Under the pieces are notes generated by a model. It had not been told where the DNA came from, did not search any database, and saw only the letters and a list, made by a program, of their open reading frames with translations. The translations under genes and the position numbers were made by a program. Below are positions 31,201-36,638 of a DNA stretch of 64,000 nucleotides, piece by piece (position 1 is the first letter of the stretch; every line of letters starts with the position of its first letter). The DNA is from Auanema rhodensis (Eukaryota > Animalia > Nematoda). The DNA lies in the NCBI GenBank assembly GCA_964057225.1, contig OZ059898.1, positions 13,764,001-13,828,000 on the forward strand, given 5' to 3'.

Positions 31201-32758
31201 ATTCGATCACAGCAGGCGGCCCACCAATAACGTACTTCGAGACCAATTTAGGAGCTGTACCAGGCTCTCTCTTCCTACTAAAGGGGGACCACCAGGACCA
31301 CCATCTCTACCGTAATCTAGCACTGACCGAATTTTGATTGACGACGAAAACGGAGTATGCAATAACAAGCTTCTGCTTAGACTCCCTCCACAACACTCTC
31401 AATCGTTTGCTCTCTAGCTCTCTTCGAACTTGTTGATATTTTCATCTGTTTCTCTTTGGCAGCCGTCCTGGAGCGCTCGGGCCATGAACGACAAGAGCTG
31501 ATGCCTTCCCGCGTCCTATGTGTCTAGCTCTATCCAATTTCTCTCTTTCTACACATTTTCGTTAAAGCAGTCTTTTGATTCAGGTTGGGGACTAACTATA
31601 AGGCAAAATAACGGTTAACGGTTGAGAAAAAAAAACAAAAAACTCTTTGTCGGCTGTTATCATCAAACTCAAAGAGAATAATGCAATTGAATATTCATCA
31701 TTTCCGATAATGAATGAAAGCAAAGAAGAAGCCACTTCTCACCAAAAACATCATGCCGACAGTTGCGTGTTCACAAGAGGCTAAAGGATAAGATAACTTC
31801 TTTGTACAAATAAAGAAGAAGGCATATTCCAACAGTAGACAGATAAAAAGGGAGAAGAGCACAACAGAGTTGCTGAGAGAAGCAAAGATAGGAAAAAGTG
31901 ACACCACGCTTAGTTCGAGCCTATAGTGTTTGTGTACCTGACACACAGTGTAAGAGAACACATACAAACAAGCAGAAGACAATTTTCTTTGTTTCGTATA
32001 CGATGTAGTCATTGATACCTCTGTCCTACATTCAACATACAAGCCGCTCTACAAGAAATAATAGAACGTACTTTTGGGGATCTGACTGTAATTAACATAA
32101 ACTTCATAACAAACCTTATGGAGGATAACCAAATCAAAGCTTACTATAGAAAACGTGAAATGATCACGAAAACTGAAAATCATCTTTAACGCAACCGCCC
32201 TTTTCAATAATAAATTGAAAATGAACACTTCACAAATGAGCATATCACGAGACAGTTATATCAAGCAATTCATTTTCTTACTCAGGAACGGGACGAAATA
32301 ACTATTAACTACCAAAAAAGGTTATATCCATAAATCCTATAATGCTTAAGATGTCATTATGCAACATATTAAGCCACATCTTATGTTAACTACTAACAAA
32401 GCATTTTACATAGGTCGTACGACTTGCGAAGGTTAGTATTTCAAGCGTAATTTCATTTCCCAAGATAGGAACCCTAATTAGAGTCGGCTACCTTCGAAAC
32501 TTGACCCACTGTTGTCACCAACAGGGGGTCCAGTCTCTCCTACTAATTAGGCCTGCGCCATTGTTCGAAACTCTAAATTGCTAGACCCACAGGTCGAGCC
32601 AATTGCTCGAACGTAATCTCAACAGGCTAATCCTGCCAACCTTCGTTACCAAACTCCAGGACATCAATAGTTACATTAGCAATTTAATGATTTATTTCAA
32701 AAAAATCTTCCTCAACAGAAAACAATAACAGTTGAGCAAACGTGCTAGTATCGTGTTT

Positions 32759-35700
32759 TTAGATCTTGTTGAAGGCAGCAATATCCACTGATTGTACCTG
32801 AAATGACAAATATATATTAACAATAGAAACATTTCTATCATTCAGAATTAGTCAAAATGGAAAAAAATATTATTCATCGGGCTTATTGTATCACTTCTAT
32901 GATATCAGCAGAGAATGCACCGTACAAGGCACGCAATCATCATTCACTACCTTAGTCACTATTCCTGATCAATTTTCTTTTATAAAGGGATCTTGAGTTT
33001 TTGAAGCCAAAAACAGTTAGAAGGTTTGTGAAAGAAAAGAACGAAGGTCAAAACTAATTTTTTATTCTAAGTTTGTTTATGGAAAACTATGACTTCGGTA
33101 ATTAATTTTACACCGGGTGCCGCTAGCCAGCTGCATCTTCAAAAGAATCACGAATTATGCATAAACGTCTATCCATACAAGGGTGCATCTATGACAGCCC
33201 CAACTGCACTGGCAAGAACAGGGATCAATGATTATGATGGAGGGGTTCCCACTGATTAGCATAATCCAAAACAAACATACTGCGGTAAGGCTTATTACAG
33301 CCTGAATCGGTTACATCAACAATGCCATCTAATTGCCAGCAAATGTGATGATGAGAGGTAAAAGAGACGTTTCTTTTCCAGAGGACCGCTTCCGTGGCAA
33401 CGTCTTATATACTAATGAGATGTTCAATCACAAGCCGCTGGGTTCATTATATCAGAAAACGGGGGATTTAACAGAAAAATTCAAATAAGGGCCTTGAGCA
33501 CCAACGTCAACACTTGAAAAAAGTGCACCAAGTCAATTTTCAGTAAAAACAACCTTGAAACCATGCGGCGCATCTTGGAAGATGATGTTGTCAAAAGAAA
33601 AACGCAGCAATTATGAATATGTGGATTGTTATAATGAAATGTTAATTATTGAATTTTTTTGTAGATGACAACCCAGCCAACGCATATCTCAACATTTATG
33701 GGTATAATCCGCATAAGGGATTAAAAGCAGCATATCCCCCAACCATCGTAAAGTTACGCAATCGCAATTGAATGATTAATGTCTCTGCATAATGATATAA
33801 CATAAATGAGAAAAACTTACGTGATCTTCGAAATCACCGGTAATCTTCTCGATCAAATCGTCTACGGAAACCTTAAGATCCTCGATAACGCAAATAATCT
33901 GAAGCTTCTTGATTCCTGTAACAATTAAAACCGTTGGTGACTAATTCTTAAATGACATACCGTATCCAATAGGGATAAGTTTTCCACCTCCCCAGACAAG
34001 TCCGTCCATTTCGATTCCACGGACAAGTTGCTCCATTTCTTCAAGGCTAGTCTCATCATCCCATGGCTTGATATCAAGGATAACTGAGGACTTGGCGATT
34101 GGTCCTGGTTTCTTGGACTTCTTCTCGTTGTAAGCCTTCAAACGCTCCTCAACGATCTTCTTCTTTTCCTCATCTTCTTCCTCGTCTTCAGATCCGAAAA
34201 GATCGAAGTCATCGTCTTTCTCAGCTGGAGCAGCAGCGGCTGGAGCAGCGGCAGCGGAGGATGAGGTCTAAAAGTATTTTTTATCAAAAGAAAAGAAGAT
34301 CAAAAAAGACACTTTATTATGTCAGAATTAGAGGTAAATTATTCCTCGTAATATAATCTACAATACGTAAACGAAATTCGTCTTGTACATCATTACAAAA
34401 ACGTTTGCCTATAGGAATCAAAGGCTGCCAAATCAGTCTATAGATTCGATTAGGAAGATAAGGTTCTGGACACATAGAACGAAGTTGTACTTCTTCAAAA
34501 ATTCTAATAACCATTCCACCCGATAAAGAATGAATGAATTCAAAAATTGTTTTTTCTAAATCTTGGATCAGATTGTCGGAACAATCAAATAAGAATGACA
34601 CATCATGATAATAGTAGGGAAGAAAATTATAAAAATTAGAATGGCAACGCATAGGCGTAGTTAATTCTTCGAATGTAGGAGAAATTTTAGAAATTTTAAA
34701 TTCTAAGCGCTGGGCGCAGCTATAATTGTTGAAACCTTTTTTAGTTTTTCGATAGCCTGAACTCTCATAACCAGGAAAGTGTTCTGGAACCAAATTTGAA
34801 ATTGATTTCAACTGTAAACCTTGCTCTGCAGCAAGATAAATAGATTGCCAACTGTCTTTTTTGTGATTTGGTGGAGAGATGGTTTCTAAGTGTTCTTCCG
34901 AAGAAACACCAGATTGCCCTACAGCTAAAGATAGATGGAAAGATCCAGTTGATGATAAAATTGAGCGAACACTTTTGAAAATTCCAGAAGCTAATTTTTT
35001 ACTTCTTAACAGATTTGTTTTACCACCCGGATGAGGAAAATTCATTATGATTAAGTCAAATTTATTGCGCCATTCAAGAGGAAGTTTGGTAGCATCTACA
35101 CCGAAAAGCAAAGAAACATTGGAACATTTTCTAAGATTCGAAACAGTATCAGAAGCAGAATAACGGGTCAAAAACAACTCTTCTTCTTCTAAAACAGTAG
35201 CCGTAACATGGCCTGTTTTGAACAATCTTGAAAGCGCTAGAGAAAATGAAAGATTTCCGTCCCCCAAAATTAAGATAGATCGAGCTGATACGAAGAAAGA
35301 CTGGAAAGTATACCCAAAATGTATAAAATATTAAAAAACCAACCTGAGAGAGCTTGAGGGACAACTGTTCGAACAACTTTTTGAGCTCGCTAAGCTCGTT
35401 CTTAATTTCTTTGTTCTCCTTTTTGAGTGAAGCAACTTCATTGAAAAGGGCGTCTGAAGAAAAATAGTTATTCAATGATAATGTAATCACTTAGTTCCTA
35501 AACACAGTCACACCAGTTAAGCACAACACTGACTAACACTTAATAAAAAAGAAAGCGCAACCAAAAAAGATAAAATTTTAAGCACAATATTAACCATTTG
35601 ATCCTACAGAAATAGCTTGTCCAGCAAGCGCACTCTTTACAGTCTGCTGCGCATTTGCGATAGCGGATTGAAGGGGATCAGACTTACGAGAATTTTCTAA

Positions 35701-35891
35701 AAAGGTCTCTCATTCCTCTCGGTACCACTAAAACTTTTCTTACCACAAGGTCCGCTAGATCCAGCTCCGGAAGCATTGCTGACGTTGCTGTAAACCTGCT
35801 TTCCACCGAAGAAAGCTTGGTCAGCAGCCTTGATAACAAGGCGAGATCCAAGGATCTTGGTAACTTCAGAGACGAGGCTTTCAACGGACAT
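32759..35891 (-). CDS. eef-1B.2: Translation elongation factor eEF1B-delta (eef-1B.2-like), 266 aa
   Basis: Exons 35891-35744, 35696-35595, 35453-35344 (leucine zipper), 34267-33961, 33915-33821 and 32797-32759. Motifs [52 protein letters not shown] and [12 protein letters not shown]. Confidence 0.95.
32842..32943 (-). ncRNA. Candidate box C/D snoRNA in the last eEF1B intron
   Basis: Minus strand: box C ATGATGA (32943-32937), D' CTGA (32908-32905), C'-like CGATGA (32879-32874), D CTGA (32845-32842), 44 nt from the 3' splice site. No terminal stem or target confirmed. Confidence 0.35.
34317..35300 (-). CDS. fdxacb1: FDXACB1/Bmt5-Bmt6-like (DUF2431) SAM-dependent RNA methyltransferase with C-terminal FDX-ACB domain; alternative terminal exon of the eEF1B-delta gene
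   Basis: Intronless 984-nt frame with [37 protein letters not shown] and YESSGYR, then YYHDVSF...IYRLIWQ (FDX-ACB-like). It begins at a TTTCCAG acceptor in phase with the eEF1B exon 3 donor, and AATAAA overlaps the stop. Confidence 0.88.
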   Translation of the reverse strand, partial: SFFVSARSILILGDGNLSFSLALSRLFKTGHVTATVLEEEELFLTRYSASDTVSNLRKCSNVSLLFGVDATKLPLEWRNKFDLIIMNFPHPGGKTNLLRSKKLASGIFKSVRSILSSTGSFHLSLAVGQSGVSSEEHLETISPPNHKKDSWQSIYLAAEQGLQLKSISNLVPEHFPGYESSGYRKTKKGFNNYSCAQRLEFKISKISPTFEELTTPMRCHSNFYNFLPYYYHDVSFLFDCSDNLIQDLEKTIFEFIHSLSGGMVIRIFEEVQLRSMCPEPYLPNRIYRLIWQPLIPIGKRFCNDVQDEFRLRIVDYITRNNLPLILT

Positions 35892-36638
35892 GATTATTAC
35901 CTAGCAATAACACTAACATTACTTTGAAATTAAAAATAACTAAAAATTTTAAAAAGAAAGAAAAGGAAAAATGTAAAAAAACGTTAAGTTAAAACTATTA
36001 ATATTAGGTAAAAAAATTATATAATTAACAAGTATATATAACACAATTATCTCCAAAAAGAGAACCCTCTATCATGACAACCTGCCAAACTTTTTGATTG
36101 AATTTATAAGAAAAAATTTTAGGAAGAGTGTGCAGTTTATTGAATCGTCATAGGAGACAATTGCGACAGACCTTTAATTTTTTGGTTTATTTACACTGGT
36201 ATCTTCAAATTGCTCGTATATATGCCATGGTTTAAAAAGTTTTGGATTATAAAACTTGATTTAAAAAAATGAAACTTTGATAATTCATTGTTATTATGAG
36301 AAAGTACAATATAACTTCTGGAAGCAACGTAGGAAGCATTAAATTCCTTATCAATAAATTTGAGAGGAGGCACTATAATATCATCAGATAAAAAAAGATA
36401 AATCCCCTCATCATCCTTCTAAGGAATCTCAGTTAATCTCATCGATTTCTGCTTCCTGGATTACTAGCTCATGCATGTTCCTCCTCATATTGGCCATCAT
36501 TTATAAATAAGCTTAAATTTCCTTTTTTTCTCACCAATTTTGTTATATATACCTTTCAATAGGTTGAATGATAATTAACTACTGTGATGTATCGTTTTTC
36601 TATTTTTATTTTTTAAATAAATCGAACATAAAAACAGA

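What the first reader, a model, noticed from the sequence alone, without database searches (positions are those of the whole stretch)
34268..35891. One locus, two enzymes: an RNA methyltransferase (FDXACB1/Bmt5-like) is an ATG-less alternative last exon of eEF1B-delta
Seen: the ~1.1-kb intron between eEF1B exons 3 and 4 holds a 328-codon intronless frame (35300-34317) on the same strand. Just upstream of 35300 the frame has an in-frame TAA, and the first ATG lies well after the SAM-binding motif ([12 protein letters not shown]), so an independent start would drop that motif. The exon 3 donor (CAG|GTTGGT, 35344/35343, phase 0) and a TTTCCAG acceptor at 35301 define a 43-nt intron, typical for this genome. 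Splicing gives ...LSLKLSQ|[16 protein letters not shown]..., a 447-aa fusion of 120 shared aa plus 327 aa. The same donor spliced to 34267 gives normal eEF1B-delta (266 aa). Known: DUF2431 is the Bmt5/Bmt6 uridine-N3 rRNA methyltransferase fold, FDX-ACB is the PheRS-beta anticodon-binding fold, and the eEF1B-delta N-terminus/leucine zipper mediates eEF1B complex assembly and oligomerisation. Inference: the methyltransferase borrows the promoter, start codon and zipper, and may be tethered to the eEF1 complex in place of the GEF domain. This would couple RNA modification to elongation. The architecture recalls cha-1/unc-17 but shares coding exons.
Basis: partly seen in the sequence, partly recalled or inferred. 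Interest (0 to 1): 0.92.

Follow-up and report, generated by a model that had tools for sequence, protein, structure and literature searches.

The report
Methyltransferase exon sharing eEF1B-delta's start
In this nematode the only gene for an FDXACB1-type RNA methyltransferase has no start codon of its own and is almost certainly made as an alternative ending of translation factor eEF1B-delta; the C. elegans reference annotation already lists the same fusion, but I found no paper that studies it.

Summary
On the minus strand, eEF1B-delta exons 1-3 encode 120 aa. A 43-nt intron (35343-35301) holds an in-frame TAA. It is followed by a 327-codon open frame (35300-34320, stop 34319-34317), and the normal exon 4 starts at 34267. 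The frame is a BMT5-like methyltransferase (Pfam E=1.4e-32) joined to a ferredoxin-fold anticodon-binding domain like that of mitochondrial PheRS (profile E=3.3e-5, and top fold matches). It is the only BMT5-like locus in the 181-Mb genome.

The first in-frame ATG is codon 86, after the SAM motif. Only the exon-3 donor is in the right phase.

The same layout occurs in C. elegans, where the reference annotation lists a 263-aa and a 440-aa product from one start. It also occurs in C. nigoni, another Caenorhabditis, an unnamed relative with a 41-nt mini-intron, and Brugia pahangi. Strongylids and Steinernema carry the gene on its own.

It is an orthologue of an annotated but unstudied isoform, not a new kind of locus. 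Tethering to the eEF1B complex remains inference. The scan had noted this same stretch once before, as the same finding.

The parts
35744..35891 (-). Shared exon 1: ATG at 35891, then the conserved N-terminus [10 protein letters not shown]...; the donor is in phase 1
   Evidence: The N-terminus matches those of nematode eEF1B-delta proteins and of the fusion models P0009, P0012, P0023 and P0032.
35595..35696 (-). Shared exon 2; the donor is in phase 1
35344..35453 (-). Shared exon 3, the leucine zipper. Its donor CAG|GTTGGT is in phase 0 and is the only upstream donor compatible with the methyltransferase frame.
   Evidence: Weak bZIP_1 match, E=2.4e-4. Three copies are predicted to form a parallel coiled coil: score 0.76 against a best control of 0.02.
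35301..35343 (-). 43-nt mini-intron with an in-frame TAA (35333-35331) and acceptor TTTCCAG. Its length is not a multiple of 3, so it must be removed to bring the methyltransferase into frame.
   Evidence: The relative L009 has a 41-nt counterpart that also restores the frame. In N. brasiliensis the acceptor sits at the same position and phase.
34317..35300 (-). Alternative terminal coding exon: 327 codons plus the stop TAA at 34319-34317
   Evidence: AlphaFold2 model with mean pLDDT 90.1.
34761..35273 (-). BMT5-like (PF10354, formerly DUF2431) Rossmann-fold methyltransferase domain, residues 10-180 of the exon, with the motifs ILILGDGN and NFPHPGGK
   Evidence: Pfam E=1.4e-32. Fold matches to TrmB and to the NpmA/KamB RNA methyltransferases. 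The invariant columns of the family are kept.
34320..34616 (-). C-terminal ferredoxin-fold anticodon-binding-like domain, from about residue 229 to 327
   Evidence: A profile of 23 C-termini hits human mitochondrial PheRS residues 325-404 at E=3.3e-5. The model has pLDDT 88.7. The top Foldseek hits are mitochondrial PheRS and bacterial PheRS beta.
34313..34318 (-). AATAAA polyadenylation hexamer overlapping the stop codon, 46 nt upstream of exon 4
   Evidence: Read directly from the sequence. The same ACATAATAAA context is found in relative L009.
33961..34267 (-). eEF1B-delta exon 4: the central acidic region and the start of the GEF domain. It is reached from the same donor at 35344 across a 1,076-nt intron.
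   Evidence: PF10587 E=7.5e-13 and PF00736 E=2.1e-12
33821..33915 (-). eEF1B-delta exon 5 (GEF domain)
32759..32797 (-). eEF1B-delta last coding exon, [12 protein letters not shown] followed by the stop

Best explanation
One transcription unit makes two proteins that share their first 120 residues: the eEF1B-delta N-terminus and the leucine zipper.

- When the exon-3 donor (35344) is joined to the distal acceptor (34267), the product is the normal 266-aa guanine-nucleotide exchange subunit.
- When the same donor is joined to the proximal acceptor 43 nt away (35300), translation runs into a 327-codon terminal exon. That exon encodes a BMT5-like SAM-dependent RNA methyltransferase with a PheRS-type anticodon-binding domain. 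It ends at a stop codon overlapped by AATAAA, so the mRNA would be cleaved before exon 4.
- The result is a 447-aa fusion.

What is shown: the anatomy, the domain identities, the reading-frame logic, and the conservation of the arrangement across nematodes, including an annotated C. elegans isoform.

What is inferred: the zipper lets the fusion join trimers with normal eEF1B-delta, and the N-terminal peptide binds eEF1B-gamma. This would place an RNA (probably tRNA) methyltransferase inside the eEF1B complex, much as valyl-tRNA synthetase docks there.
For: Frame logic.
- The methyltransferase frame is closed by a TAA 31 nt upstream of the acceptor.
- Its first in-frame ATG is codon 86, after the SAM motif, and five out-of-frame ATGs precede it.
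- The donors of exons 1 and 2 are in phase 1. Only the exon-3 donor is in phase 0.

The gene is live and unique.
- Pfam BMT5-like E=1.4e-32.
- 19 invariant family columns are kept.
- AlphaFold2 pLDDT is 90.1.
- It is the only PF10354 locus in the genome.

Conservation of the fusion.
- C. elegans is annotated with a 263-aa and a 440-aa (BMT5-like) product from the same start. I reproduced the longer one as 114 + 326 aa.
- C. nigoni, C. brenneri, Strongyloides and Aphelenchoides avenae models start MSVE... and run into the methyltransferase.
- The order N-terminus, methyltransferase, GEF holds in C. elegans, C. nigoni, a Logan Caenorhabditis contig, relative L009 and Brugia pahangi.
- The junction always keeps the frame: donor read-through in Caenorhabditis, a 41-nt intron in L009, a roughly 360-nt intron in Brugia, and 43 nt here.
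- In N. brasiliensis, where the gene stands alone, the acceptor has the same position and phase.

Polyadenylation. The stop with an overlapping AATAAA is shared with L009.

Tethering.
- Three copies of the zipper exon scored 0.76 against a best control of 0.02. That mark was reached by 21 of 30 proteins solved as pairs of one chain and by 0 of 23 solved as single chains. The runs agree in 100% of contacts and the partner pLDDT is at least 88.
- In human eEF1B-beta (delta) the zipper trimerises and residues 11-29 bind eEF1B-gamma (PMC9458455).
Against: - The four runs that hold 63-67% of the stretch's words are only guessed to be RNA.
- The C. elegans isoform is known to me only as an annotation row. 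I did not see its supporting cDNA.
- eEF1B-delta is a housekeeping factor, so the proximal acceptor must be used rarely. What restrains it is unknown.
- The N-terminal peptide found no solved relative, so eEF1B-gamma binding is untested here.
- The complex prediction used three copies, unlike its calibration, and coiled coils are easy to predict.
Confidence: 0.8

Rival explanations
1. The methyltransferase is an independent nested gene. It would have its own promoter or first exon somewhere upstream, or be SL trans-spliced at the 35301 acceptor and start at a non-AUG codon or an internal AUG.
For: - In Strongylida and Steinernema the orthologue is a stand-alone gene with its own ATG exon.
- Same-strand nested genes are reported elsewhere in this genome.
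- TTTCCAG could also serve as a trans-splice acceptor.
Against: - Only 43 nt separate exon 3 from the acceptor.
- By eye I saw no ATG on this strand in intron 2, and the one in intron 1 soon meets a stop. This was not scripted.
- A trans-spliced mRNA would meet five out-of-frame AUGs. The first in-frame one would drop the SAM motif.
- The ATG-less state and the frame continuity with the zipper exon are kept in Caenorhabditis, L009 and Brugia.
Confidence: 0.1
2. The methyltransferase exon is an internal cassette. The protein would then be a three-part N-terminus, methyltransferase, GEF chain, as in many public gene models of 555-640 aa.
For: Such models exist for C. remanei, C. tropicalis, C. 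angaria, Panagrellus, Aphelenchoides, Ditylenchus, Brugia and Cercopithifilaria.
Against: - Here the exon ends in TAA TAA with an overlapping AATAAA. I saw no phase-0 GT donor within its last six codons.
- The last strand, LIL, is part of the confidently folded domain.
- In B. pahangi the frame also ends in a stop followed by AATAAA. The Brugia models cut out part of the FDX-ACB domain, which looks like a gene-predictor artefact.
Confidence: 0.03
3. It is a decaying relic in the intron that is no longer expressed as protein.
For: It has no ATG of its own, and no RNA data were obtained for this species.
Against: - A 327-codon open frame has a chance probability of about 2e-10.
- All invariant residues are kept.
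- The model folds with high confidence.
- It is the sole copy in the genome.
- It is 45-53% identical to orthologues across clade V.
Confidence: 0.02

Closest known systems
C. elegans eef-1B.2 (Y41E3.10): the 440-aa product in the reference annotation
   Same: It is the orthologous locus. The ATG, the N-terminus and the zipper are shared with the 263-aa factor, followed by a BMT5-like plus FDX-ACB-like terminal coding segment that lies in the intron before the GEF exons.
   Different: In Caenorhabditis there is no mini-intron. The donor CAG|GTAAAT is simply read through in frame. Here a 43-nt intron with a stop codon that also shifts the frame must be spliced out. I found no paper that discusses the C. 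elegans isoform.
Human FDXACB1 and the eukaryotic BMT5-like + FDX-ACB proteins
   Same: Same two-domain make-up: an N-terminal PF10354 methyltransferase and a C-terminal PheRS-type ferredoxin-fold anticodon-binding domain. NCBI names the Trichinella homologue FDXACB1-like.
   Different: Elsewhere it is a stand-alone gene. From my own knowledge, human FDXACB1 is about twice as long and its substrate is unknown. Orthology to the human protein was not tested by a reciprocal search.
Yeast Bmt5/Bmt6, the 25S rRNA m3U methyltransferases (PMC3950682)
   Same: Same Pfam family and Rossmann fold, with a glycine-rich SAM motif.
   Different: The yeast enzymes are not described with an FDX-ACB domain. 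The animal 28S m3U is made by the unrelated SPOUT1/Ptch enzyme (bioRxiv 10.1101/2024.06.27.600882), so an rRNA m3U role cannot simply be carried over.
Human EEF1D long isoform eEF1B-deltaL (PMC4346937, PMC6451099)
   Same: Alternative splicing of the eEF1B-delta gene yields a protein with a second, non-GEF function.
   Different: The human isoform adds an N-terminal domain and keeps the GEF part. Here the GEF part is replaced by an enzyme.
Valyl-tRNA synthetase docked on eEF1B through eEF1B-delta (PMC9458455)
   Same: It is a precedent for a tRNA-handling enzyme being physically attached to the eEF1B complex.
   Different: ValRS binds non-covalently through its own extension. Here the attachment module would be part of the enzyme's own polypeptide. 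That attachment is inferred, not shown.
The cha-1/unc-17 cholinergic locus of C. elegans
   Same: Two proteins are made from one promoter by alternative splicing around a nested gene.
   Different: From my own knowledge, cha-1 and unc-17 share only a non-coding leader. Here 120 coding residues are shared.

Membership tests
BMT5-like methyltransferase (PF10354) | Match to the family model above its curated cut-off | tested here: met
   113.7 bits against a cut-off of 24.7, covering profile positions 1-166 of 168. The genome-wide scan gave 115.6 bits.
BMT5-like methyltransferase (PF10354) | Class I Rossmann methyltransferase fold with an intact glycine-rich SAM motif | tested here: met
   AlphaFold2 pLDDT 90.1. 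The best fold matches are TrmB and the A1408 rRNA methyltransferases. G13, D14 and G15 are invariant or nearly so. Equivalence to Bmt5 G182 was not mapped.
BMT5-like methyltransferase (PF10354) | Uridine-N3 methylation of rRNA | not testable with these tools
   This needs biochemistry. The animal 28S m3U is assigned to SPOUT1.
FDXACB1-type two-domain protein | C-terminal FDX-ACB (PheRS anticodon-binding) domain | tested here: met
   Pfam PF03147 does not hit (0 of 30 relatives). A family profile does hit mitochondrial PheRS residues 325-404 at E=3.3e-5. Foldseek ranks mitochondrial and bacterial PheRS first, with E from 6e-4 to 1e-2.
FDXACB1-type two-domain protein | Reciprocal best match to human FDXACB1 | not tested
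   The human protein lies outside the length range of the protein search. The only support is NCBI's name for the Trichinella homologue and an Atlas cluster that pairs PF10354 with PF03147.
eEF1B-delta | N-terminal region, leucine zipper, central acidic region and GEF domain, in that order | tested here: met
   PF10587 and PF00736 in exon 4 and a zipper in exon 3. The 266-aa model ends ...FNKI as in C. elegans. There is one delta locus plus one other GEF locus in the genome.
Alternative terminal exon with intronic polyadenylation (as annotated for C. elegans eef-1B.2) | In-frame junction with the shared exons, and a stop plus a poly(A) signal before the next constitutive exon | tested here: met
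Alternative terminal exon with intronic polyadenylation (as annotated for C. elegans eef-1B.2) | Transcripts that carry the junction and end at the internal poly(A) site | not testable with these tools

The most novel reading that the evidence does not exclude
[quoted passage not shown] It would enter through mixed zipper trimers and the gamma-binding peptide, and methylate tRNA at the point where tRNA is handed to eEF1A, perhaps recognising it through the PheRS-type anticodon-binding domain. That would be the first RNA-modifying enzyme built into an elongation-factor complex. It would also give orphan FDXACB1 proteins a function. This state would be ancestral to clades III-V of nematodes.
Probability: 0.3. 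Interest if true: 0.8.

Novelty: new member of a known kind. Interest (0 to 1): 0.55.

Why it matters
FDXACB1-type methyltransferases occur widely in eukaryotes, but I found no paper assigning the animal enzymes a substrate. The one known animal 28S m3U is made by a different enzyme.

Across a wide range of nematodes, the model worm included, this enzyme is encoded only as a fusion to the assembly module of eEF1B-delta. That acts as a natural "Rosetta stone" pointing to a working link with the elongation machinery and with tRNA.

The idea can be tested directly in C. elegans by removing or tagging the isoform-specific exon without touching the essential factor.

It also matters for annotation. 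Many public nematode gene models join all three parts into one 555-640-aa protein, which is probably wrong.

Tried and rejected
The sequencing-run search gave four runs that hold 63-67% of the stretch's words, from assemblies of 18-21 million letters. That fits transcriptomes that include the methyltransferase exon. It would also fit DNA of a strain about 1.3% different. I do not count it as evidence.
- Pfam FDX-ACB. No hit in the window protein or in any of 30 relatives at E<=1. This was superseded by the profile and fold searches.
- N-terminal peptide against solved structures. No match, so eEF1B-gamma binding is not supported by sequence here.
- Rfam on 32400-35930. Only a chance-level snoRNA match at E=0.9.
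- Logan contigs that carry the C. elegans frame. They are colinear with the genome and unspliced, so they give no RNA evidence.
- Literature. Papers that name Y41E3.10 or eef-1B.2 mention no second isoform. Papers on FDXACB1 are gene lists only.
- dN/dS. Not attempted, because the nearest relatives are 45-53% identical in protein and synonymous sites are saturated.
- Own first exon. I considered a strongylid-type ATG exon for this species. Those exons are too short and too variable to search for by homology.
Full report
**1. What is in the sequence**

The gene lies on the minus strand. Reading and translating it gives these eEF1B-delta exons:

| Exon | Coordinates | Note |
|---|---|---|
| e1 | 35891-35744 | starts at the ATG |
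| e2 | 35696-35595 | |
| e3 | 35453-35344 | leucine zipper |
| e4 | 34267-33961 | |
| e5 | 33915-33821 | |
| e6 | 32797-32759 | ends with the stop |

- Exons 1-3 encode 120 residues ending LSLKLSQ. The full factor is 266 aa.
- Exon 4 carries the EF-1-beta acidic region and the start of the GEF domain (PF10587 E=7.5e-13, PF00736 E=2.1e-12).
- The introns are 47, 141, 1,076, 45 and 1,023 nt.

Inside the 1,076-nt intron, 43 nt after the exon-3 donor (CAG|GTTGGT), the sequence TTTCCAG is followed by an open frame of 327 codons (35300-34320, stop 34319-34317).

- The same frame has a TAA at 35333-35331.
- At this composition (34.5% G+C), a frame this long has a chance probability of about 2e-10.

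**2. What the frame encodes**

- Residues 10-180 match Pfam BMT5-like (PF10354) end to end, E=1.4e-32.
- An AlphaFold2 model built on 30 relatives has mean pLDDT 90.1. Its N-terminal half matches Rossmann RNA methyltransferases such as TrmB and the NpmA/KamB A1408 enzymes.
- Pfam's FDX-ACB model does not hit this protein or any of 30 relatives.
- A profile of 23 C-terminal halves does hit the C-terminal anticodon-binding domain of human mitochondrial PheRS (residues 325-404, E=3.3e-5).
- A separate model of the C-terminal 133 residues (pLDDT 88.7) has mitochondrial PheRS and bacterial PheRS beta as its best Foldseek matches.
- An Atlas cluster of about 320-aa eukaryotic proteins pairs PF10354 with PF03147.

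So the "Bmt5-like plus FDX-ACB" reading holds. The genome has exactly one PF10354 locus, this one. It has one delta-type locus plus one other GEF locus.

**3. Why the frame cannot stand alone**

- The first in-frame ATG is codon 86 (35045). It lies after the [11 protein letters not shown] motif and is preceded by five out-of-frame ATGs.
- The 43-nt gap is not a multiple of three, so reading through the donor shifts the frame (ORF 35149-35490).
- The donors of exons 1 and 2 are in phase 1. Only exon 3 ends in phase 0.
- By eye I saw no ATG on this strand in intron 2.

The only simple way to translate the intact enzyme is ATG 35891, then exons 1-3, then the splice 35344^35300. This gives 447 aa.

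**4. Comparative evidence**

This is the main support.

*Protein searches.* The best relatives are nematode proteins at 45-53% identity. Several begin with the eEF1B-delta N-terminus MSVE... and run through a zipper into the methyltransferase:
- C. nigoni, 433 aa
- C. brenneri, 441 aa
- Strongyloides venezuelensis, 424 aa
- Aphelenchoides avenae

*C. elegans.* The reference annotation lists two products from the same start at the eef-1B.2 locus: 263 aa with the GEF domain and 440 aa with BMT5-like. I reproduced the second as 114 shared residues plus 326 read-through residues ending at the annotated stop.

*Gene order.* tblastn shows the colinear order N-terminus, methyltransferase, GEF in five other loci:
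- C. elegans
- C. nigoni
- a Logan Caenorhabditis contig
- an unnamed relative (L009)
- Brugia pahangi

*The junction differs between lineages but always keeps the frame.*

| Lineage | Junction |
|---|---|
| Caenorhabditis | The donor (CAG\|GTAAAT, AAG\|GTAAAT) is read through, giving ...GQ-V... |
| L009 | A 41-nt intron with an in-frame TAG at its acceptor restores the frame |
| Brugia | An intron of about 360 nt joins a phase-0 donor to the exon, which ends in TAA followed by AATAAA |
| This window | A 43-nt intron |

The intron lengths 41 and 43 leave different remainders modulo 3, and in each case the downstream frame is offset to match. That is hard to explain unless the junction is translated.

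*Stand-alone copies.* In Nippostrongylus and Steinernema the gene stands alone with its own ATG exon. In Nippostrongylus the first intron's acceptor sits eight codons before LLILGDGN in phase 0, exactly as here.

*Tree.* A maximum-likelihood tree of the methyltransferase part follows nematode phylogeny:
- Trichinella and Plectus fall outside.
- This window falls in the clade V group, outside Caenorhabditis plus Strongylida.
- By parsimony (not formally tested), the fused state predates the split of clades III-V, and the stand-alone genes are later escapes.

**5. 3' end**

- The stop is followed at once by a second TAA. AATAAA (34318-34313) overlaps it, 46 nt before exon 4.
- L009 has the same ACATAATAAA context.
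- This fits an alternative terminal exon with intronic polyadenylation.
- I saw no phase-0 GT donor within the last six codons of the exon. I therefore regard the 555-640-aa three-part public models as predictor artefacts, at least for this species.

**6. Mechanism beyond the anatomy (inferred)**

- The shared 120 residues here include the conserved N-terminus and the zipper.
- Three copies of the exon-3 peptide were predicted to form a parallel coiled coil. The score was 0.76 against a best control of 0.02.
  - That mark was reached by 21 of 30 proteins solved as pairs of one chain and by 0 of 23 solved as single chains.
  - The runs agree in 100% of contacts, and the partner pLDDT is at least 88.
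  - The job held three copies, unlike its calibration.
- Both isoforms carry the same zipper, so mixed trimers are plausible.
- The anticodon-binding-type domain and the TrmB-like fold point to tRNA rather than rRNA.
- The animal 28S m3U is made by SPOUT1/Ptch, not by this family.
- None of this was tested.

**7. What is missing**

- The word shares of the four candidate runs (0.63-0.67) are ambiguous.
- I found no paper that describes the second isoform in any nematode.

**8. Verdict**

- The locus is therefore an orthologue of a known but unstudied arrangement. It carries a lineage-specific twist: a spliced mini-intron instead of donor read-through.
- The functional coupling to elongation is an attractive hypothesis that can be tested directly.

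Noticed in passing
Proteins P0031, P0039-P0041, P0044-P0049, P0052; locus L010:4767-5759: Many public nematode gene models (555-640 aa) join the N-terminus, the methyltransferase and the GEF domain into one protein. In B. pahangi the methyltransferase frame ends in TAA followed by AATAAA, and the Brugia models skip part of the FDX-ACB domain. These models look like gene-predictor artefacts.
   Followed up: partly
L005:6001-7135 (N. brasiliensis); L006:6001-7229 (Steinernema carpocapsae): In Strongylida and Steinernema the methyltransferase is a stand-alone gene with its own short ATG exon. There are no eEF1B exons within 6 kb. The Nippostrongylus acceptor is positionally identical to window 35301.
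   Followed up: partly
P0033 (Mesorhabditis spiculigera, L011:5001-7693) and P0030 (Logan contig): These methyltransferase genes show no eEF1B GEF exons nearby. Yet they begin with a heptad-like segment (for example QKDIRQELETIRTHLEDL) that resembles the delta zipper. It may be a carried-over piece of the fusion.
   Followed up: no
window 32798-33820: The last eEF1B-delta intron is 1,023 nt, far longer than the 45-47-nt norm in this gene. The scan noted it separately as highly base-paired. Rfam found nothing significant in it.
   Followed up: partly
window 34313-34322 and L009 about 1780-1795: The context ACA TAA TAA A, a double stop with an overlapping AATAAA, is identical in this species and in a relative whose protein is only 45% identical.
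   Followed up: partly
P0021 (Logan contig, 387 aa): A homologue from an unidentified nematode has an N-terminal stretch that looks like a mitochondrial presequence before the GDGN motif. It may be read-through of an intron by a caller that ignores splicing.
   Followed up: no
The tool itself says the filter also trips by chance. I did not study them further or send them to any tool.
   Followed up: no
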